Below are positions 1,792-11,197 of a stretch of DNA of 64,000 nt, piece after piece; position 1 is the first letter of the stretch, and every line of letters begins with the position of its first letter. The notes below the pieces were generated by a model. The model did not search any database. It saw nothing but the letters and a program-made list of their open reading frames with translations, and had not been told where the DNA came from. A program made the translations under genes and the position numbers. The stretch comes from Calcarisporiella thermophila CBS 279.70 (taxonomy: Eukaryota; Fungi; Calcarisporiellomycota), in assembly GCF_041956535.1 (NCBI RefSeq), contig NW_027192222.1:84426-148425 (forward strand), given 5' to 3'.

Positions 1792-3880
1792 ATGATCAGA
1801 ATTCACTATGGAGGCTTACAAGTGCTCCGTCATGCCGCTACACGGCCGTTACCTCGGCATACCCTTAGAATGACTCACTCTACCCGATACCCATGTCCTA
1901 ATTTTTTTAGAAATGCAAGCTTTTCGCCACCAAGACGCCTAGTCACTCCCCTACCATTAATGACCTGCACAAGGCGTCTATCATTGCTCTCTTTCCCGTT
2001 TTTGCAACATCAAACACCAAAAGTTCTTCCCGTCCAACCATCGATTGCCGACTCCACTCTGTCATCTCTCTCTAATCCTCAAAAATCCCATTATGCATGG
2101 TTTCTTCAATTTCTTAGTTTCCTTCGGCGTCTTGCAGAGCCAATTATAATCATTTTAAGGTTTTTGGATTTGGTTCGAATATTTTTCCCAGTTATTTTTT
2201 GCAGCCCGATGCTGTTGGTTGGGGAGAGAATTCCTGAGTTGGATGGAGCAAGAAAGGGCGCAATTTGGTGGTATCGGCTGTTGGCAGCGCAAATGGAACG
2301 AGCTGGCCCAACATTCATCAAGGTTAAATAAACAAATTCACATTATATTCGGTTGTATTGGCAGCTCACATTTCATTTGTCATTTGTTAGTTGGCTCAGT
2401 GGGCAGCTTCGCGCACCGACCTTTTTCCTGTCGGATTCTGCCGGACCGTTGGCCGCCTACACTCCCAAGGCATCCCACATCCCTTTTACTGGACCCGTCG
2501 CTCAGTAGAGGCGGCATTTAACATGCCACTGGAGGAGATATTTTGCGAGTTTGAAGAAGTCCCCCTGGGCGTCGGAGCCATTGCTCAGGTTTATAGCATT
2601 GTTTTTTCAAAATCTAGCGTGTCATTTACTGAACTCTTCCAACCTTCAAACCCTAGGTCCATAAAGCGAAGCTAAAACTCAACACCCAACTCTTGTCTGA
2701 TCCCTCCAATCCTGATTGCGTTGTCTGTGCGATCAAAGTTCTCCACCCCAATGCTGCAACATCAATTCGAAGAGATCTCACCATACTTGAAACCGTAGCA
2801 TGCTTCATCAACATCTTTCCAACCATGTCTTGGCTCTCGTTACCAGATCAAGTGAGAGAATTTAGCCAGACCATGATGAGCCAGCTTGATCTTCGGGTCG
2901 AGGCTTCGAATCTTGAAACATTTATATCTCACTTCAAAGACAGAGAGCGAGTCAAGTTTCCTCAACCTATTTTGCCCGCACACGATGTGCTGGTGGAGGA
3001 ATTTCAGAGAGGTGTCCCACTGGAGCGATTTTTAGAACTAGGCGCAGGCGAATTTGATGCACAACTGGCACAGACGGGCCTGGATGCCTTCCTGCACATG
3101 GTCATCATGGACAATTTCGTGCACAGCGATTTGCATCCGGGCAACATACTGGTTCGATTCTGTAAGCCCTTGGCTAGGAGTTTACCTTTGCAATACTGGG
3201 CTCGGTGGCGCCATAAGCCTTTAGTGGATGATTCACAATCAGATGAAGTCGTTGCGCGGTTGATGAAAGCTTTTGAACAAGGCAAAGATGAATGGCACCG
3301 GGAGTTGAGTTCGGTGAAGGCAGAAGGATTTGTTCCTCAGTTGGTGTTCATTGATACGGGCCTTGTCACGGTTCTCAACGGCGAGAATCGCCGTAACTTT
3401 TTGGATCTATTCCGTGCCGTAGCCGAATTCGATGGCTATCGGGCCGGCAAACTGATGATTGAAAGATGTCGCACGCCAGATCTGGTGGTAGATGGTGAGG
3501 TCTTCGCTCTGAAAATGCAGCATCTTCTGCTCAGCATCCGACCCTCGAGCTTGCGCCTCCGCAGTGTCGAGATAGGGGATGTGTTGCACCAAGTGATGGA
3601 CATGGTTCGAAATCATCATGTTCGTCTCGAAGGCAGCTTCATTAACCTTGTCATGTCTATCCTACTTTTGGAGGGCATTGGACGCCGGTTGAATCCAGAT
3701 ATGGACTTGCTTAAGAGTGCGCTCCCGATTTTGCGAAAGCTTGGGACAAGCGATATGAGGGGTGCATACGAGATGGCGAAGGAGCTGCCTGAATCGGGAT
3801 GGTGGTTGAAGGTGTGGATATTCTTGGAAATGAAAGACTTGTTCGAATCTAGAAGAGAGTACGACGAGTACCCAATATAG
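1792..3880 (+). CDS. ABC1/UbiB atypical kinase, ADCK2/Cqd1 (YPL109C)-like, 3 exons
   Basis: AGPTFIK-LAQWAASRTDLFP, GVGAIAQV, AIKVLHP, NFVHSDLHPGN and FIDTGL motifs; mitochondrial presequence-like N-terminus. Confidence 0.9.
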
Positions 3881-5059
3881 TAAGTAGCTCTTTAATGCTG
3901 TCTACAATTTCTCCATGCTAATGTGGCCAATTGGGGCTCTCTCCTATTTTTTCACTCTTAATAGCGACTTCTGCGCATTCCCAACTACTTAACTCTTCAT
4001 TCAAGCGAACGAAACCTAGATTTTCTCTTTCTGTATGCGTGTTGTATTTATATATTAATATATAGATGATATGGACAATCACAAAGAGCTTGAGATATAA
4101 ATAGCATGTAAAAACATGTAAAGATATTTATAATTTCTGATATTTTGGAGAAATCTATCCAGATACGTGCGGTAAAAAGAAGGTCATCTTTAGTCAACAG
4201 TATATTTGGAGATATAAGACGAAAAAATGAGAAAAAACATGGATTCAATAACTTATCCAAGTGTCCCAGTTTTGGACCCAATCATATAGTTTTTGGAAAC
4301 TTTCGATAAACAACAGCTTTAGCAAATTCTCCTAATGAAGGCTTTTTGTAAGACAAGCAAATTTTGGAAGTCCAAGAGTCGCAAATAGCTTTTGTCACAT
4401 GAAGTGTTGGGAAGGAACGATCAAAAGCTTAGGGTTAGCTAAGGAATCGCTAGGATGGAATCTTATTAGCTATTAATCCGACACAACACTTTGTACGTCA
4501 ATTAATTTTCTTATATACGGTATTTATATATGTAATATGTTAAAATGGTATTCTTTTTTCAAATATGATAAAAGTTTGAAACATACATGTAAAAAGAGAA
4601 AAATTGTTGGAGGGACTTGAATGCTACTATGTCTTCATCTTACAAATCAAGCTTTTATGCAAATTGGCATTGATAATTGGATAGCGCGAGAAGAGAGCCT
4701 ATTGCAACAGAAAACAGATCTCGAGCAAAATATATTAAAAAGCTACCATCTTGAACGATTTTGTGTTCAAGAATTTTCTTGTGTCTTGTCTGAATTTTTT
4801 TCTTGCAGTGATAATTAAATGAGAGTGCTAAGTCAGTTCTACTGCACCATCCCCCGTTGTCCTCCTGGAAAAGTAGGATAATACATAAAGTCCCGGTCTT
4901 TGTATTATTGCATCTATTTTTTTCTTACAGCTCTATGATATTCGCCTACATATCATTACTTCGCTCATTCCCTTGCGCATTACTATCTGCAAGTTTTCGC
5001 AAGCCATTGTAGCTTGTAATTCTTGAAGTGCACCAGAGGGCCCATGAAAGTCTAAAAAA

Positions 5060-6875
5060 TCAGAGCTCATTTTCATATACTGCCCAATTCGAGCCCATCA
5101 GGAGAGGGAGATCTGCACGCGATACAAGGGTAACTGGATGTCCGCAGAATAGACTCCTTTCTGACATCATAGTATTGCTTGTTGTGATATATACATAATG
5201 GACACCTTCAGGCAGAGTCTTCTCGAGTTCGAGCTTCAGAGCTGCGGCATTTGGAAACCGCGGAGTGTTCTCTTTGGTCAGACAAAGAGACATGTAATAT
5301 TTGATAATCGACATATTATTCATCGTATATGTATCCTTCGGTTTCTTGATAATTCGTTTTTTGAGATCAGTAACCTTGGACCAGTGTTCGTTGTATGGCG
5401 ACAAAGAAATTTGAATAAAGTATAGTTCGCAGTCCATTGAATATGCTAATAGATCTGCAACTGAGTGTCCCTTTTTCAGAATTATTAGAGTGCCCGGTTC
5501 CAAAGCAGATACAGCATGCAGCGTCGAAATTTGTTCGATTGTTTGGATGAGGGTAATATTCCAAGTTTTCCTTTGTGGCTTTCCCGTGAGGGTCCTGCCA
5601 TTGAAGCGGATATCAATGCGCTTATGTGGCCTGAAGGTCAAGGTAATCAGAAGCCCGAATGCTCGCCATTTGAAAGATGGGTCTGCTAACTGACGTTAAA
5701 TCATTTAAGTTAGCGTTTGTAAACATACACACACAAAAAAGATAACATTGAATCTACCAACAAATTAATAGATGGCTAATACGATTGCGCCATATACTGG
5801 ACAAAAGCCCTGATCACGGGCGGACAGATATATACCCATACTCCTGCCCGTGATTTAGGGACAAACAAACCACTTATTTTCCATTGCAACGGTGGCTCCC
5901 ACAGCGACATATTTGTAGCAACTGCTACCGCGTAGTCATGGATCTTTCGCTGTTCAAAGGGGTCCATTTTTTCTGCACGGTCAAAGGTTTCCCTGATTTT
6001 GCTCTTGTATAACTGGGTAGCTCGATCGTAAAATCCACCGGTGTTGTCGCGAATTTTACTGAGAGAAATGTCCAGTTGTGTATACCAAGCCTCACACCAA
6101 AAAAATATCATCCGCGGAATAAGTCCTGAATGATATCGAATCTGGTTGGCATCAATAACTAATAAATAGTTAAACATGAAGTGAATTAAATTCAACAGAC
6201 ACTGTCCGAAGTTAAACTGTACCTTCGGGAAGTCGCTTAAAATTCTGTTGGCATTTCAAGATGGAGCTGAATTCATCTTTGTCATAGGGTAGAATGTCAA
6301 TCATAATCGTCTGTGCATCGGCGTTCCAAAATTCTTCATATAGATCGAAAGAAGAGGAAATGGCATAGAGCCAAAAGCCCGACTGCTAGAAGCAGATACA
6401 TTCATAAAACAGTAGTAATAATCGAGATGAATGCATTATGCGAGACATACCAGTCTGTTTTTGGTGAAAAGTTTCAACACTTGGTTGCTCATATTTTGGA
6501 GAGAGCACCTAGCATTCCATTCATCGACGGCAACGGGAACCGGATATTTACAACAATTAAGGTATAGTTAGAGCAAAGTAATCATTTTGAGGTATCGATA
6601 GAGACAGAGTTTAACTCACTCAAACTGTGCATTAAGAATAACATTAAAAACCATTTCTAGAGTTTTAAACGGATCCTTGTAGATGTACTTAACAATACAG
6701 TCATACAGAGATAGATTCTGATTTTGCTCTTCATTGATGCCAAAATATCGAGATATGAGCTGACTAAGAGACTTTTCGACTTTGATTGTCTTAAGTTTAG
6801 CTTTTTCAGCACTCAAAAAACCCATCAAAATATTCATAGCAGCTCCTGCTTCATTAAGTTGACTGAGTTCTCCCG
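5060..6875 (-). pseudogene. Crinkler-like NTPase + restriction-endonuclease-fold gene remnant, 5' part lost
   Basis: Exons translate to a Walker-B-like VAVDEWN (~6510-6535), SGLIPRMI, and C-terminal VADLLAY...YFIQISLSPY (PD-(D/E)xK-like). In-frame TAG at 5776-5778 and no clear acceptor AG near 6560. Family call is by motif resemblance only. Confidence 0.5.
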
Positions 6876-6938
6876 CTGAAAATTAACATATATACAAGAT
6901 TATTTTTGTTAGTGATCAATGAAAATAAATTGACTCAC

Positions 6939-8873
6939 CTGATGACAGAGCCAGTTTCGTTCCCAGGAGTTGATGCACCGACTTCCAAAGGTTGCTGATG
7001 AACCTAGGGTCGTGGTCTGATATAATAGTTTGCGGAATGCCATGGAGCCTGAAGATGACCTCGAAGAATATTTTGGCAATGGTGACTGCGTTGGAGGTGG
7101 TATTTGTGGCGACGAAGTGAGCCATCTTGGATAGTCTGTCTACGAATACTATAATTGCATCGTGACCCTTTTTGGATTTTGGTAGGTGGGTTATTAGGTC
7201 CATAGAGATTTGTTGCCAGCGCTGGGATGGTGTAGATAATGGTTGTAGTAGGCCTATTGGAGCTCGGTTGTTTGCTTTTGTTCTTTGGCATGTGTCGCAG
7301 CTTCTTATGTACTTCTTGACACTCTCGACCATTCGTGGCCAATAGAAATTGCGTTGCACACGTTCATAAGTCCTCTCCACTCCCAAATGTCCAGCTATTG
7401 CAAGATCATGGTTTTCCTGGAGCAGCTTTGTTCGAATCCCCGGATCTTCTGGAATATAAAGGCGATTTTTATCTTCTTTCTCATCTCCGTAGAGGAGTAA
7501 TCCATTCCGCAGCTCGTAGTATTTGATCAGATGATTCAGCTCTCGCGGTACCGGCAAGTCGGGGTCTCCCAGTTGTTTCACTAAGTCGTTAAATATAGGA
7601 TCATTAGTATACTTGGATTTGATTTCCGTCAAGAATTTTTCAGGGATTGCGAGGTGGATATCGCGCTAAGCATGAGGTCTGGCCTCCTGGACAGTGCATC
7701 GGCTACAACATTGCTTTTACCGGGCTGATAAATTATCTCATAGTTGTAGCTCTGGAGGGTTTGCATCCATCGTGCTTGCCTCCCCGTCAGGGTGGGCTGT
7801 GTGTTGAGGTAACGCAGGGGTGCATGGTTGGTATATATCCGGCAATAGGTGTATTCCATGGGCAGTTTCTGGCGAAGTGACCCGTCTTTCTGCAGCGAAG
7901 GCATTCTCCCATTTGGATAAGTAGGTTCCGTTCCCCTGGGGCTAGTTTCTTCAACCGTTGTGTCTGAACGCCGTCTATCTCCAGAGGAATGGCATGGTCG
8001 AATGGCATGTGGCTTGTTGGTTGACGCATTGGGCTGGGGCTTGTGTTTCTATGGAAGCTTGGGTATTTTACTTGGTCAAAAACGTTTGTGAAGTTAATTG
8101 CTTCCTTAAGGGATTTGGGTTGGCGGATCTTGACATCTGCTTGAGTGTTAGGTTTCAGTCCTCTGATGAAACAGTGGAGTGTCTCCGAGTTGGTCATATC
8201 CGGGATATTGTTGATTATGGTCTGGAATGTGTACGCGTACTCCCGGACGGATCCAGTTTGGCGAAGCCTGTCAAGTCGTTCGCGTGCGATGACTTCGGAG
8301 CCAATAGGTTTAAAATGCGTGTGGAACAACTGGGCGAGGTGGTCAAAATTGGTTGGCATGAGTCCTTGGTTGGACTTGGCTCGTCTCTCATATGTATTCC
8401 ACCAGGCCAGTGCATTTCCTCTCAGATACGAAATTACATAAAGGAGTTCGTCCTGGGGAGGTAGCTTATACAGCTGCAAGAATCTTCATATCGACGCGAT
8501 CCACGAATCCACGTCTTCCTCATAGTTACCGTGGAAATAGACGGGTTTACCGGGTTGGGGTGTTGACTTTGGTTCAAGGGCAGGGGGTGGAGTTGGAGTA
8601 GACTTCTTGTTTTCCTCGACTTTGGCTTCAAGTGAATTGTACGCTTCATTAAGCTGCATGATGTATCTGTACAACTGCGCAGGGTATGCGTCGGGTGTCA
8701 CTTCCATGTCCATGGGGTTCATATTGATTGAGTTTATGTGTTTCAGGGTTACTAGGGAAACTGGGTTACTTGGGATCTAAGGTACTAGGGGAAATTGGGA
8801 ACTAGGAGAAGAAGTGGGTAGTACCTCATCTACAGTAAGGGGAATCTGTATCCTTTGGTTAGTTCTAGTTTTC
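6939..8873 (-). mobile_element. Internally deleted Ty3/Gypsy LTR retrotransposon (gag, RNase H tail, truncated integrase)
   Basis: Gag at 8722-7860 (LRGNALAWW, LRQTGSVREY, knuckle CLRCRKTGHFARNC) joins directly to the RNase H end (YTNHAPL...RQARW...YQPGKSNVVADALSR). Integrase follows (GHLG...CDTC, ISMDLI, VDRLSK, ISDHD) and stops before the catalytic Glu. Frameshifts near 8480 and 7630. No protease or RT; LTR boundaries not resolved. Confidence 0.9.
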
Positions 8874-8888
8874 CAACTTAAGAATGCC

Positions 8889-8994
8889 TTTTTTATAACA
8901 AAGGACCTTTATTGAAAAGTATCCTATCCTGTTAAAAAGGTAGGGTAGCTTCTACGTCAAAAGCACCCAGGTAATGTTCCTGGCCTATCTTGCA
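8889..8994 (-). mobile_element. 5'-truncated non-LTR retrotransposon (3' UTR only), copy B
   Basis: Diverged repeat of 9013-9116, with AATAAA and an A-tail on the minus strand. Flanked by CAACTTAAGAATGCC (8874-8888) and CAACTTAACAATACC (8995-9009), 13/15 identical, read as a TSD. Confidence 0.8.
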
Positions 8995-9012
8995 CAACTT
9001 AACAATACCGCG

Positions 9013-10420
9013 TTTTTTTTTAACAAAGGACCTTTATTGAAAAATATCCTGTACAGTTAAAACGGTAGGGTAACTTCTACGTCAAAATCACCTGGGTACT
9101 GCCCCCAGCCTACCTTAAAGTGGTTTACAAGTGAGAAGAAAGTAGATAGATTGTTAGAGTTGGTTGATTTGAATGGTTGAGTATGTAAGATAGTAAAATA
9201 TAGATAGAAAATTTTTCTTTACTCTCGCATATCGTTTGATAAGCAGAAAGCAAAGGTGCTGAAAGAGAGTGACATTTACTGTCGCTGCAATATATATCTA
9301 AGCTCATGTTCCGTTGGGACTTCTGGTCGTTTTTACCTTAGTTTTAGGGGGGCTCTTGGTCTTTGAGGGGCTTTTTGGCTTAGTGATAGTTTTCCGTGTT
9401 GGATGATTGATGCGCGTGGGTGATTTAGTAGGACTGAAGTCGAACTTCAGATTCTTTTGGGAGGCTAGGAATTCTTGCAGGTTCACCGTCTTGATTTCGG
9501 GGCTCCTCTTGGCAGGCACGCTGGATGGTTCAAATCCGGATATTTCGCTGAACACTTTGGATTCTAGAGATTTGGTATTAGGAGTCTGTGGGGTACTGGA
9601 TATTTTAATGGTATTTTCTTGTTTCTTCTCTGATTGCTCGGTCTCACCATCCGTATTCATTCTATCTGGCGTGGTTTCACCAATGAGCGGGATGAGTGTT
9701 TGCACGGGCTTATTTCCTTGGTGCTGTTTATTCTTCTTTGGGCATTCTGTTCGTATGTGACCAGGAGTCTTACAGTAATTACACACTGGAGTAGATCCTC
9801 TCCAAGAAAGGATTATCTTGTCCTCATCGATGGATAGCTGGCGAGGTAGAAGGTTTTCTAAAGGTTCCGTGGTTTCAGGGTTCGGTTCAAGTATGGCGTA
9901 GCAGTATTCTTGTAACCACCCCGTGTTGCCATAGTATTGGAAGTCGATCTGAATGACTCGAGCATACTTGGACAAGGCTGCTTCCAATTTTCCCCTGAGG
10001 GATTCCTCTTCCTGACCAGGGAGATCGTTAATTCTAACGTTTAACACTCTCTGGGATGTGGAGAGAGTCTTGTAACAGGGGACTTTCCGATCATTATTTG
10101 ATTACCTCTTGAATATTTACCTCATTCCGGAATGCGAGAATGTTGGTCTTGGAATGTCCAAGGATCTTGATGGCTGCCACTTGCTTTTGATACTTCTCAT
10201 ATATTAGCTTCACTGCTTCTTGGGATGAGAACTCAAAACGCGAAAACTTGAAAGTGACCGAGTTTTTGAAAGAAGATCTAGGCGGGCTTGTGTTGACATT
10301 CTCCAGAGTCAGTCTCTCGACTGGGTCTTTGGTTTTCCGGGTGCTTGCTACGTGTAGAGCATCCGCGTAGGATGGATGGATATCAGGGGGAACACTAGCC
10401 ATTTTCTTATCGCGTTTTCT
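9013..10420 (-). mobile_element. Non-autonomous LINE-like element (ORF1 plus ORF2 stub, poly(A)), copy A
   Basis: ORF1 from ATG 10402 to 9304 (frameshift ~10095) has an RRM-like region, CCHC knuckle CNYCKTPGHIRTEC and a basic low-complexity tail. An ATGA overlap leads into a 60-aa ORF, then AATAAA and A9 (9013-9021). TSD is CTTAACAATACCGCG (8998-9012) / CTTAATAATACCGCG (10421-10435). Confidence 0.85.
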
Positions 10421-10507
10421 CTTAATAATACCGCGACGCAAGCGTGACTGCTTAAATAATTCTCCTTATCAAAAGATTATTTTCTTTCATCAAAAATCAA
10501 AGTAGGA

Positions 10508-10581
10508 GTTTTCGTGGTGTAGTTGGTTATCACGTCTGTCTAACACACAGACGGTCTCCGGTTCGAATCCGGACGAAAACA
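10508..10581 (+). tRNA. tRNA-Val(AAC), intronless
   Basis: Acceptor stem GTTTTCG/CGAAAAC-A, A-box TGGTGTAGTTGG, anticodon arm TCTGT-CT AAC AC-ACAGA, T-arm CCGG-TTCGAAT-CCGG, and downstream T-runs (Pol III terminator). Confidence 0.97.
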
Positions 10582-11197
10582 TTGATATTTTTGTTTTTTA
10601 TTTTCTGCATAATATTTTTATTGCCGAGTTCAACCACCATCATCTTACTTAATACCTTTTATTACTGACATCTCTGTGACAAGATAGGAGTTTAACAACT
10701 AAAAGCTAGTAAGAAATTGTTAAAAAGGATGAAAATTTACACTACTTCCTGCTGTTTTGAGCGGAATACTGCTGCAAGCTTGGTTTCAGAGTTTTAATAA
10801 CAACTAGTTCTGCACGCAGATGGAAAACTTCTCTAAGATCGAATTATCTATTTATACCATACATCAATTATGCCTGAGCTAGAAATTAGATAAGTCTCAA
10901 TATGTTCGTAACTCATCTAATAATCTTAAAGCAATCTGTGTAATTCATGCCTTACCCATTATTTGATGTTCCTTTCTAAATACTGTTACATGGTTAGTCA
11001 GCAATTATCTGATAACCCCTGAAAATCTGCTAGATCACCGTCTTTTCATATAATCATTACGGTAATTTTATAAAGTACTCCTGAGGGAAGAAAATAGCCA
11101 CAATTATATATTTGCTAAAAGAAGTCTCTAATTAACGCATATATATTGTGCTATTATTTAAATTGTCACTCTATCTACTCTTTTTTAAAATATAAAA

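What the first reader, a model, noticed from the sequence alone, without database searches (positions are those of the whole stretch)
8874..10581. Candidate tRNA-gene-targeting non-LTR retrotransposon in a fungus: two independent insertions 3 bp apart upstream of tRNA-Val
Seen: the same ~15-bp target occurs three times (8874-8888 CAACTTAAGAATGCC; 8995-9012 CAACTTAACAATACCGCG; 10421-10435 CTTAATAATACCGCG). These bracket two poly(A)-tailed elements with homologous 3' ends: a 106-bp truncated copy and a 1.4-kb ORF1-bearing copy. Removing them puts their 5' ends 90 and 87 bp upstream of the tRNA-Val(AAC) +1, both pointing away from the tRNA. The nick site (CCGCG|ACGC) is not an L1-type TTTT/AA site. 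Established: Dictyostelium TRE5 non-LTR elements insert orientation-specifically at a fixed distance 5' of tRNA genes via ORF1-TFIIIB contact, while the classic fungal examples (Ty1, Ty3) are LTR elements. Inference: a convergent Pol III-targeting LINE family in an early-diverging fungus. I am not aware of a described case but cannot search.
Basis: partly seen in the sequence, partly recalled or inferred. Interest (0 to 1): 0.9.

Follow-up and report, generated by a model that had tools for sequence, protein, structure and literature searches.

The report
Fungal LINEs that target tRNA genes
In the fungus Calcarisporiella thermophila, several families of poly(A) retrotransposons (LINEs, an ORF1-only derivative, a young tRNA-derived SINE) insert at one spot, about 60-90 bp upstream of tRNA genes and always pointing away from them. 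For non-LTR elements this habit has so far been described only in social amoebae.

Summary
The window comes from Calcarisporiella thermophila (Calcarisporiellomycota).

**In the window.** A 1408-bp ORF1-only element (family A, 9013-10420) and a 106-bp 5'-truncated copy of a sister RT-encoding LINE (family B, 8889-8994) lie head-to-tail upstream of tRNA-Val(AAC), on the opposite strand. Each has its own 15-bp target-site duplication. The two duplications are offset by 3 bp, at -73..-87 and -76..-90.

**Genome-wide.**
- At 15 different tRNA genes, duplications that flank poly(A) elements start 60-76 bp upstream.
- None was found at that position in the opposite orientation.
- 51 of 55 element segments within 2 kb upstream point away from the tRNA.
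- A 328-bp tRNA-like SINE (at least 100 copies, 95-98% alike) starts at -81..-91 from 10 of 63 independently listed tRNA genes. About 0.001 would be expected by chance.

**What it resembles.** ORF2 is L1-like. The behaviour parallels Dictyostelium TRE5 and NLTR-B, but sits about 20 bp further out. Papers in the searched library report this for non-LTR elements only in dictyostelids.

**Not tested.** Contact with TFIIIB or TFIIIC, and phylogenetic independence from the TRE elements.

Other first-stage readers flagged the same pattern in other windows of this genome.

The parts
10508..10581 (+). tRNA-Val(AAC), the targeted Pol III gene
   Evidence: ARAGORN. A T-run terminator follows at about 10596.
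10436..10507 (.). 72-bp spacer between the tRNA and the insertion site. It is left intact and is presumed to hold the TFIIIB footprint. It contains a GTGACTGC motif at 10444-10451.
   Evidence: Sequence. Related CAGTCAC or GCGCCAC motifs lie upstream of other tRNA genes at variable offsets.
10421..10435 (.). tRNA-proximal copy of element 2's 15-bp target-site duplication (-73..-87). The first-strand nick falls between 10435 and 10436 on the + strand.
9013..10420 (-). Element 2: family A, 1408 bp. It is an ORF1-only non-autonomous LINE derivative with an 18-nt leader, an AATAAA signal and an A9 tail.
   Evidence: There are 5 other near-full copies at 82-89% identity. ORF1 is broken in every copy examined.
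10094..10402 (-). N-terminal piece of ORF1 (102 aa from the ATG). The frame is broken before the next piece.
   Evidence: It aligns colinearly with ORF1 of a Rhizopus L1-like LINE.
9304..10047 (-). C-terminal piece of ORF1 (247 aa), holding a CCHC zinc knuckle and a K/S/P/T-rich tail.
   Evidence: Pfam zf-CCHC is marginal, at 19.6 bits against a cut-off of 20.8. 24% identity, E = 8e-9, to Rhizopus LINE ORF1 including the knuckle.
9013..9116 (-). 104-nt 3' tail shared by families A and B (84-87% identity).
8995..9012 (.). Middle target copy. 8998-9012 is the distal duplication of element 2. 8995-9009 is the proximal duplication of element 1.
8889..8994 (-). Element 1: a 106-bp, 5'-truncated copy of family B (the RT-encoding LINE), ending in ATAAAAAA.
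   Evidence: 93.5-95% identical to B tails and 81.5% to the A tail.
8874..8888 (.). Distal copy of element 1's 15-bp target-site duplication.
7787..8810 (-). Context only: a degenerate Ty3/Gypsy fragment (gag). Its homology to the one other genomic copy starts 63 bp beyond the LINE target.
   Evidence: Pfam Retrotrans_gag and Ty3_capsid. Own-genome search. No LTR repeat in 3500-9000.

Best explanation
This is a tRNA-gene-targeted community of non-LTR retrotransposons in Calcarisporiella thermophila.

**Members.** L1-like LINEs (family B, and at least one further lineage, D) supply the machinery: an ORF1 protein with two RRM-like modules and a CCHC knuckle, and an ORF2 protein with reverse transcriptase and a C-terminal zinc domain. 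In related families of this genome, an apurinic-type endonuclease domain lies next to the RT. The same machinery is also used by non-autonomous passengers: the ORF1-only family A, a 328-bp tRNA-like SINE, and shorter poly(A) elements.

**Proposed mechanism.** The ribonucleoprotein is brought to tRNA genes loaded with the RNA polymerase III factors. The endonuclease nicks the tRNA-sense strand about 60-76 bp upstream of the mature 5' end, whatever the local sequence. Reverse transcription is primed there from the poly(A) tail. The second strand is cut 11-16 bp further out. The result is an element whose 5' end faces the tRNA gene and whose transcription runs away from it, flanked by an 11-16-bp duplication.

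**Arrays.** The site is re-used, so later insertions land between the tRNA and the earlier ones. This builds head-to-tail arrays with the youngest element nearest the gene. The window shows one such array: family A inserted 3 bp closer to tRNA-Val than a family B fragment.

**Shown versus inferred.** Shown: the site, the orientation, the duplications, the families and the lack of a target consensus. Inferred: the contact with TFIIIB/TFIIIC, and which element protein makes it.
For: **Window anatomy.**

**Position.** Scanning upstream of 33 tRNA genes for duplications that abut an A-run puts the proximal copy at -60..-88 for 15 different tRNA genes of 13 anticodon types. In the histogram, 19 pairs start in the 60-79 bin and none between 100 and 380.

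**Orientation.** The mirror-image scan finds none at that position. Its only hits lie 9-35 bp from L051's tRNA-Glu and belong to the neighbouring tRNA-Val array seen from its far side. Within 2 kb upstream, 51 element segments point away and 4 point toward the tRNA.

**Independent sampling.**
- 63 tRNA genes were listed by tRNA score alone, and 100 SINE heads were listed by pattern (the reversed-pattern control gave 0).
- 12 SINE heads fall within 3 kb of a listed tRNA gene.
- 10 of those start at -81..-91 in divergent orientation. About 0.001 would be expected by chance.

**No sequence recognition.** The 15 nick sites share no consensus; the highest column reaches 0.84 bit. The innermost targets are not poly(A) tracts.

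**Different families at the same site.**
- Family A: window and L004.
- Family B: L033.
- Family D: L043 and L050.
- SINE: L016, L025, L032, L040, L046.
- Five different 3' tails occur at the site.
- The identical 14-bp duplication is used three times at L040.

**Age order.** SINE copies are 95-98% alike and are the tRNA-proximal member of mixed arrays. The 82-95% LINE copies lie further out.

**Element type.**
- ORF2 has RVT_1 and a sub-threshold zf-RVT match of 24.3 bits against a cut-off of 27.5.
- It matches human L1 ORF2p at E = 1e-67, against 1e-29 for R2.
- Its closest database relatives carry endonuclease, RT and zinc domains.
- Endonuclease-coding stretches lie directly next to RT stretches elsewhere in this genome.
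- An A-type ORF1 is physically fused to a B-type ORF2 in L014.
Against: **Biased, incomplete sample.** Only 51 loci (about 215 kb) could be read.

**Masked sequence.** Many loci carry N-runs that hide the 5' parts of the LINEs. As a result, no full-length family B copy, its 5' end or its endonuclease domain was seen directly.

**Loci without a visible tRNA.** About 20 element loci show no tRNA or other Rfam gene within the readable flank. The flanks there are short or masked.

**Position varies between genes.** The site differs by about +/-8 bp between tRNA genes. In some loci it seems to track a conserved upstream block as well as it tracks the tRNA 5' end. The true ruler (transcription start, TFIIIB edge, nucleosome or bound factor) is therefore unknown.

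**No protein-interaction evidence.** Single-sequence ORF1 models were too poor to use.

**No evidence of current activity.** Every family A copy examined is broken, and no sequencing run was listed. Activity is inferred only from SINE similarity.
Confidence: 0.82

Rival explanations
1. Same targeting, different ruler. The elements read a chromatin or DNA-structure feature that sits upstream of active tRNA genes, such as the edge of the nucleosome-free region, a positioned -1 nucleosome, or a factor bound to the CAGTCAC/GCGCCAC-type upstream motifs. They do not touch TFIIIB or TFIIIC directly.
For: The site (-60..-90) lies outside the usual TFIIIB footprint. It varies by about 16 bp between genes yet is exact within a gene. 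Recurrent upstream motifs and 50-95-bp blocks shared by different tRNA genes lie just proximal to the nick.
Against: The motifs sit at variable offsets from the nick, from 3 to about 40 bp. Several targets have no recognisable block. Strict orientation is easier to explain by a polar protein complex. No chromatin data are available.
Confidence: 0.12
2. Sequence-specific endonuclease. The LINE recognises a DNA motif that happens to occur upstream of tRNA genes, in the manner of Tx1- or R-element-type site-specific elements.
For: Some tRNA genes share long upstream blocks. In those loci, the duplication falls at the same place within the block (L002 and L046).
Against: The 15 independent target sites have unrelated sequences, and no column exceeds 0.84 bit from -45 to +11. 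The window's target core is not repeated elsewhere as an insertion site.
Confidence: 0.03
3. Poly(A)-tract targeting, as in Candida Zorro3. New copies insert beside existing A-tracts, and the arrays grow outward from a chance first insertion.
For: In arrays, each duplication is directly preceded by the poly(A) tail of the neighbouring element. Zorro3 does target poly(A) (PMC7175516).
Against: The tRNA-proximal target copy is not next to an A-tract at most genes, yet it sits at a constant distance from the tRNA. Young SINEs are proximal and old LINEs are distal, the opposite of outward growth. In the window, the proximal and middle target copies are the more alike pair (1 difference against 2), as expected if element 2 inserted last, next to the tRNA.
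Confidence: 0.02
4. Random insertion followed by selection. Copies survive only in the harmless space upstream of tRNA genes.
For: The genome is compact (28 Mb). tRNA genes and transposable elements are clustered in the same regions.
Against: Selection cannot produce a 16-bp window, exact re-use of the same duplication, or a 51:4 orientation bias. It also cannot explain SINE starts confined to -81..-91.
Confidence: 0.01

Closest known systems
Dictyostelium discoideum TRE5 elements (TRE5-A/B/C), L1-type tRNA-gene-targeted non-LTR retrotransposons
   Same: Poly(A) non-LTR elements that insert at a fixed distance upstream of tRNA genes, in the opposite transcriptional orientation, with short target duplications and no target consensus. 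An abundant ORF1-retaining deletion derivative exists here, which to my recollection parallels TRE5-A.2. ORF2 has RT and a zinc domain. Literature: PMC5911963, PMC5006619.
   Different: The host is a fungus, not an amoebozoan. The site is 60-90 bp upstream rather than 40-54 bp. ORF1 is a recognisable RRM-like/CCHC type that is homologous to ORF1 of Mucorales LINEs, whereas TRE ORF1 proteins resemble nothing known. No A/B/C-module UTR structure was seen. A tRNA-derived SINE shares the site. The phylogenetic relation to the TRE elements was not tested.
Polysphondylium pallidum NLTR-B and Dictyostelium purpureum NLTR-A
   Same: These are further non-LTR lineages that acquired tRNA-upstream integration independently (39-64 bp and 2-6 bp upstream). 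They show that the trait evolves repeatedly (PMC5006619, PMC5911963).
   Different: They carry an RNase H domain in place of the C-terminal zinc finger, and they occur only in dictyostelids.
Yeast LTR retrotransposons Ty1 and Ty3 (and Tj1, Tca8, Tyl6)
   Same: They are fungal retroelements that use Pol III genes as safe havens. Targeting works through contacts with TFIIIB (Ty3) or the Pol III subunit AC40 (Ty1).
   Different: They are integrase-based LTR elements, not target-primed non-LTR elements. Their positions also differ (the transcription start for Ty3; a window of up to 1 kb for Ty1).
Candida albicans Zorro3 and Mucorales L1-like LINEs (e.g. the Rhizopus arrhizus element in L052)
   Same: They are fungal L1-superfamily LINEs with an ORF1 carrying a zinc knuckle and an ORF2 with endonuclease, RT and zinc domains. 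Family A's ORF1 aligns with the Rhizopus ORF1. Named ORF2 hits are from Mucoromycota.
   Different: Zorro3 targets poly(A) tracts. The one Rhizopus copy examined has no tRNA gene within 5 kb upstream. Neither shows positional targeting of tRNA genes.

Membership tests
Non-LTR (LINE-type) retrotransposon, L1 superfamily | Poly(A) 3' end, variable 5' truncation, and target-site duplications from target-primed reverse transcription | tested here: met
   A-tails, 11-16-bp duplications, and copies truncated at many different 5' positions.
Non-LTR (LINE-type) retrotransposon, L1 superfamily | ORF2 with an L1-type reverse transcriptase and a C-terminal zinc domain | tested here: met
   RVT_1 at E = 4e-37. 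zf-RVT is below Pfam's cut-off (24.3 against 27.5 bits). Human L1 ORF2p at E = 1e-67, against 1e-29 for R2.
Non-LTR (LINE-type) retrotransposon, L1 superfamily | N-terminal apurinic/apyrimidinic-type endonuclease in ORF2 | tested here: inconclusive
   This region of family B is N-masked in every locus held. The closest database relatives carry Exo_endo_phos. Endonuclease-coding stretches abut RT stretches of other LINE families in this genome, known by coordinates only.
tRNA-gene-targeted non-LTR elements of the TRE5 type (by behaviour) | Integration at a narrow, fixed distance upstream of tRNA genes, independent of target sequence | tested here: met
   Duplications start 60-76 bp upstream at 15 tRNA genes, and SINE starts fall at -81..-91 from 10 more listed tRNA genes, one of them shared with that set. 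No consensus. The distance differs from TRE5's 40-54 bp.
tRNA-gene-targeted non-LTR elements of the TRE5 type (by behaviour) | Orientation opposite to the tRNA gene (head-to-head) | tested here: met
   51 segments point away and 4 toward within 2 kb. All 10 SINE/tRNA pairs are divergent.
tRNA-gene-targeted non-LTR elements of the TRE5 type (by behaviour) | Dependence on the Pol III factors (ORF1p-TFIIIB contact, need for the B box) | not testable with these tools
   No TFIIIB sequences from this genome could be fetched. The ORF1 models had pLDDT 36-43.
TRE clade of Dictyostelia (by descent) | RT phylogeny places the element inside the TRE5/TRE3 clade | not tested
   No TRE reference sequences were reachable. 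The best named relatives are Mucoromycota LINEs at 30-37% identity.
tRNA-derived SINE (the passenger at the same site) | tRNA-like 5' head with A and B boxes, a short body, a poly(A) tail, duplications, and no ORF | tested here: met
   The 328-bp unit has a head with TAGTGTAGTGG and GGTTCGAATCC boxes. The Rfam tRNA-clan match is weak only, E = 5e-5, below gathering. At least 100 copies. 95-98% identity.
Site-specific LINEs (R1/R2, Tx1-type) or Zorro3-type poly(A) targeting | A conserved target sequence or an A-tract at the insertion point | tested here: not met
   The targets are unrelated in sequence and mostly not A-rich.

The most novel reading that the evidence does not exclude
Tethering of L1-like LINEs to the Pol III complex arose independently in an early-diverging fungal lineage. 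At least two LINE lineages and three or more non-autonomous families share it, including a SINE whose 95-98% copy identity suggests recent activity. That would make a thermophilic fungus, whose proteins tend to be stable, a second system, and the first fungal one, for working out how a target-primed retrotransposon measures its distance from a tRNA gene.
Probability: 0.55. Interest if true: 0.85.

Novelty: new variant of a known kind. Interest (0 to 1): 0.78.

Why it matters
Position-specific integration of non-LTR retrotransposons next to tRNA genes is a textbook case of a "safe haven" strategy. In the reviews and surveys in the searched library (PMC5006619, PMC5911963, PMC7175516) it is reported only for dictyostelid amoebae. 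The fungal examples there are all LTR elements that use an integrase.

A fungal LINE/SINE community with the same geometry would do three things.
- It would show that target-primed elements reached this solution at least twice.
- It would offer ORF1 proteins of a recognisable type for mapping the contact.
- It would make "which host factor sets the distance" testable by comparison, since the site here is 60-90 bp upstream against about 48 bp in Dictyostelium.

It also matters for annotating this genome. Much of the repeat content and many assembly breaks sit in arrays upstream of tRNA genes.

Tried and rejected
- **Discrete 104-bp short element: rejected.** Those copies share conserved upstream sequence and are 5'-truncated family B copies of 142 bp to over 3.5 kb.
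- **Target inside a Gypsy LTR: rejected**.
- **"ORF2 stub" between ORF1 and the tail of family A: no support.** It shows no similarity to the endonuclease N-terminus of the closest ORF2 relative. Its origin was not identified.
- **Structure prediction of two natural ORF1 pieces.** Mean pLDDT was 36 and 43, so no fold search was run.
- **Public sequencing runs.** None was listed for 8500-10800, so no read-level test for empty sites or expression was possible, and read laying was not used.
- **Rfam at gathering threshold on 20 element loci without a tRNA.** It found nothing.
- **One Rhizopus relative.** It has no tRNA gene nearby. A single copy says little.
- **5S rRNA genes as targets.** Four 5S hits were found. 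Only a weak one has a SINE head nearby, at -10 rather than -80. This is unresolved.
- **Further genome DNA.** I did not try to obtain the same genome through another tool.
Ages are therefore judged only from pairwise identities.
- **One literature search was badly worded** and gave nothing useful.
Full report
**1. What is in the window**

ARAGORN finds one tRNA gene in the 64 kb: tRNA-Val(AAC) at 10508-10581 on the plus strand. Two elements lie immediately upstream of it, on the minus strand, and both end in poly(A).

- **Element 2 (9013-10420, 1408 bp).**
  - It starts with an 18-nt leader and an ATG at 10402.
  - It carries an ORF1 now split into two frames, 10094-10402 and 9304-10047. The second holds a CCHC knuckle.
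  - It then has about 190 nt of unidentified sequence, an AATAAA signal and an A9 tail.
- **Element 2's duplication.** It is flanked by CTTAA(T/C)AATACCGCG at 10421-10435 and 8998-9012.
- **Element 1 (8889-8994, 106 bp).** It is flanked by CAACTTAA(C/G)AAT(A/G)CC at 8995-9009 and 8874-8888.
- **Offset.** The two 15-bp duplications overlap with a 3-bp shift, at -73..-87 and -76..-90 from the first base of the tRNA.
- **Priming nick.** The primer strand is the tRNA-sense strand, cut at CCGCG|ACGC. It has no T-run to pair with a poly(A) tail.

The 12-nt target core with up to 2 mismatches occurs nine times in the window. Three of those are these junctions.

**2. Which elements they are**

The window's contig belongs to a 28.2-Mb, 116-contig genome.

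*Family A.* Searching the genome with element 2 gave five further near-full copies at 82-89% identity and many 5'-truncated ones. ORF1 is broken in every copy examined.

*Family B.*
- More than 25 hits matched only the last 104 nt, all starting at the same query position. They are not a discrete short element.
- They share conserved sequence further upstream and are truncated at many different points (142 bp to over 3.5 kb).
- They are copies of a second, longer family whose tail is 84-87% identical to A's.
- Family B encodes an ORF2 with RVT_1 (E = 4e-37) and a sub-threshold zf-RVT match (24.3 bits against a cut-off of 27.5) (L051:6102-8267 and 8606-9139).
- That ORF2 matches human LINE-1 ORF2p at E = 1e-67, against 1e-29 for R2.
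- Its best database relatives (about 40% identity) carry endonuclease, RT and zinc domains. The named ones are from Mucoromycota.

*Links between A and B.*
- Element 1 of the window is 93.5-95% identical to B tails and only 81.5% to A's. The window therefore holds one insertion from each family.
- In L014, an A-type ORF1 fragment (93%) is fused by an internal deletion to a B-type ORF2 (97%). This ties the two families to one lineage, with A as the ORF1-retaining deletion derivative.

*ORF1.* Family A's ORF1 aligns colinearly with ORF1 of a Rhizopus arrhizus L1-like LINE. The alignment covers two RRM-like modules and the knuckle (E = 8e-9 and 1e-5).

*Endonuclease.*
- The endonuclease part of B was never seen, because that region reads N in every locus held.
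- Endonuclease-coding stretches do lie directly next to RT stretches of other LINE families in this genome, including one open frame of 1372 codons. This is known by coordinates only.

**3. The host**

A 1474-residue TOR exon in the window is 100% identical to a protein of Calcarisporiella thermophila. This fungus is a thermophile placed in its own phylum, Calcarisporiellomycota.

**4. The genome-wide test**

These gave three lines of evidence.

*(a) Position.*
- I read the sequence upstream of each of 33 tRNA genes, outward from the gene. I looked for 12-mers (up to 1 mismatch) that recur immediately after an A-run.
- At 15 different tRNA genes, the gene-proximal copy starts 60-76 bp and ends 70-90 bp from the mature 5' end. 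These genes are Val-AAC, Val-CAC (two), Leu-CAA (two), Leu-TAA, Lys-CTT (two), Gly-GCC, Ile-AAT (two), His-GTG, Pro-TGG, Thr-TGT and Gln-CTG.
- In the histogram, 19 pairs start in the 60-79 bin, 2 in the 40-59 bin, 1 in the 80-99 bin, and none from 100 to 380. Pairs further out are the displaced duplications of outer array members.

*(b) Orientation.*
- The mirror-image scan (duplication followed by a T-run) finds nothing at that position. Its only hits near a gene lie next to L051's tRNA-Glu, which is the neighbouring tRNA-Val array seen from its far end.
- Of 55 element segments within 2 kb upstream of the tRNA genes that carry any, 51 point away.

*(c) An independent sample.*
- A 328-bp element with a tRNA-like head, carrying A-box- and B-box-like motifs, turned out to be the commonest occupant of the site. 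Its match to Rfam's tRNA clan is weak.
- It has at least 100 copies by pattern search, with 0 for the reversed-pattern control. The 40 copies scored are full length and 95-98% alike.
- I crossed the 100 listed heads with the 63 tRNA genes that the genome search had listed by tRNA score alone. Twelve fall within 3 kb of a listed tRNA gene.
- Ten of those start at -81..-91 in divergent orientation. One lies at -402, also divergent. One lies downstream. About 0.001 would be expected by chance in that 11-bp window.
- Nine of these ten tRNA genes are not among the 15 above. At least 24 tRNA genes therefore carry an element at the site.

**5. What the site is not**

- **Not a sequence motif.** Aligned on the nick, the 15 targets share no consensus; the highest column reaches 0.84 bit from -45 to +11.
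- **Not an A-tract.** Most gene-proximal targets are not A-rich, so this is not Zorro3-type poly(A) targeting (PMC7175516).
- **Not a Gypsy LTR.**
  - In the window, the only other genomic copy of the adjacent Gypsy fragment matches from 63 bp beyond the target.
  - No LTR repeat is present.
- **Not survival after random insertion.** The window is only 16 bp wide, and the orientation is uniform.

**6. Arrays and order of insertion**

Elements of five different tail types occupy the same site in head-to-tail arrays (A/B, D, the SINE, a "C" tail and a short "X" element). One array has up to six members (L018).

- At L040, the identical 14-bp duplication brackets three successive elements.
- At L051, a C-type element and a 3.5-kb family B copy have duplications shifted by about 6 bp. 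This is the same picture as in the window.
- The young SINE is the gene-proximal member in the mixed arrays, and the more diverged LINE copies lie further out.
- In the window, the proximal and middle target copies differ at one position, while each differs from the distal copy at two.

Both observations fit re-use of a site measured from the tRNA gene, with new copies pushing old ones outward. They do not fit growth from existing tails.

**7. Mechanism**

*Shown:* a position-specific, orientation-specific, sequence-independent nick on the tRNA-sense strand 60-76 bp upstream, and a second nick 11-16 bp further out. At least two RT-encoding lineages (B and D) and several passengers share this site.

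*Inferred:* the ribonucleoprotein is positioned by the Pol III pre-initiation complex, as established for Dictyostelium TRE5-A through ORF1p-TFIIIB contacts and the need for the B box (PMC5911963). The site here lies about 20 bp further from the gene than TRE5's 40-54 bp.

*A live variant:* the ruler could be a chromatin feature, or a factor bound to the recurrent upstream motifs and shared 50-95-bp upstream blocks.

*Could not be tested:* no protein-contact test was possible. The ORF1 models were unusable, and the host's TFIIIB sequences could not be fetched.

**8. Comparison with what is known, and novelty**

- Surveys and reviews in the library list tRNA-targeted non-LTR elements only from dictyostelids. 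They name TRE5, TRE3, NLTR-A and NLTR-B (PMC5006619; PMC5911963).
- The fungal cases they list are LTR elements.
- The fungal LINE whose targeting has been studied, Zorro3, goes to poly(A).
- Searches for later reports found none, and papers naming this fungus do not treat its repeats.
- By behaviour, this system works like TRE5 and NLTR-B. Membership of the TRE clade by descent was not tested.
- Its nearest named relatives are Mucoromycota LINEs. The one Rhizopus copy I looked at has no tRNA gene upstream.
- I therefore class it as a new variant of a known kind.
- Other first-stage notes flag the same pattern in three other pieces of this genome. I did not read those pieces.

**9. Limits**

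- The locus sample was chosen by element homology, apart from the SINE-by-tRNA cross.
- Many loci contain N-runs that begin inside SINE heads or LINE bodies.
- About 20 loci show no Pol III gene within short or masked flanks.
- No sequencing run was listed, so there is no read-level evidence for polymorphism or expression.

Noticed in passing
L002:3500-3565, L042 (upstream of tRNA-Phe at 5445-5519), L046 (upstream of tRNA-Ile at 1768-1843), L050 (upstream of tRNA-Met at 3433-3504). Other classes in L012, L013, L016, L036 and in L025, L039, L047.: tRNA genes of different anticodons share 50-95-bp upstream blocks at over 90% identity, in at least four classes. The blocks start 14-34 bp from the gene. 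The LINE/SINE target lies inside or at the end of these blocks. They could be an upstream promoter element or remnants of an older inserted repeat.
   Followed up: partly
G000 contig 5, 1186694-1186848 (not in the window): A weak 5S rRNA match (47.8 bits) has a SINE head ending about 10 bp upstream of it, in divergent orientation. The two strong 5S genes on contig 31 have no listed SINE or LINE nearby.
   Followed up: no
L040:914-1241 and at least 100 other places in the genome: A 328-bp tRNA-like SINE has copies 95-98% alike. It encodes CCA after the acceptor-like stem and carries variable leaders of 1-38 nt before the head. Its partner LINE was not identified: its tail differs from those of families A/B and D.
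   Followed up: partly
window 10403-10420; L002, L003, L004, L005 at the 5' ends of family A copies: Family A copies have unrelated leaders of 3-23 nt between the duplication and the ORF1 ATG. So the family has no conserved 5' UTR or obvious internal promoter.
   Followed up: no
L014:1501-2963: A single copy joins the middle of an A-type ORF1 directly to a B-type ORF2, about 100 codons into the part of ORF2 that is readable in L051. This is an internal-deletion derivative that links the two families.
   Followed up: yes
L051:3445-5900, L015:752-1370, L034:1211-2318 and more than 25 other loci: Runs of N, withheld or assembly gaps, start within SINE heads or LINE bodies. They hide the 5' halves of the long elements.
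   Followed up: no
window 7787-8810 (minus strand): A degenerate Ty3/Gypsy fragment (gag with a CCHC knuckle) lies about 150 bp upstream of the same tRNA gene once the LINEs are removed. Only one other copy of its 5' region exists in the genome (87% identity).
   Followed up: partly
G000 contigs 8 (936-1217 kb), 10 (204-214 kb), 24 (86-89 kb) and 29: tRNA genes are strongly clustered, often in divergent pairs about 140-300 bp apart. An array aimed at one gene can therefore end next to another, as at L051 (tRNA-Val / tRNA-Glu).
   Followed up: partly
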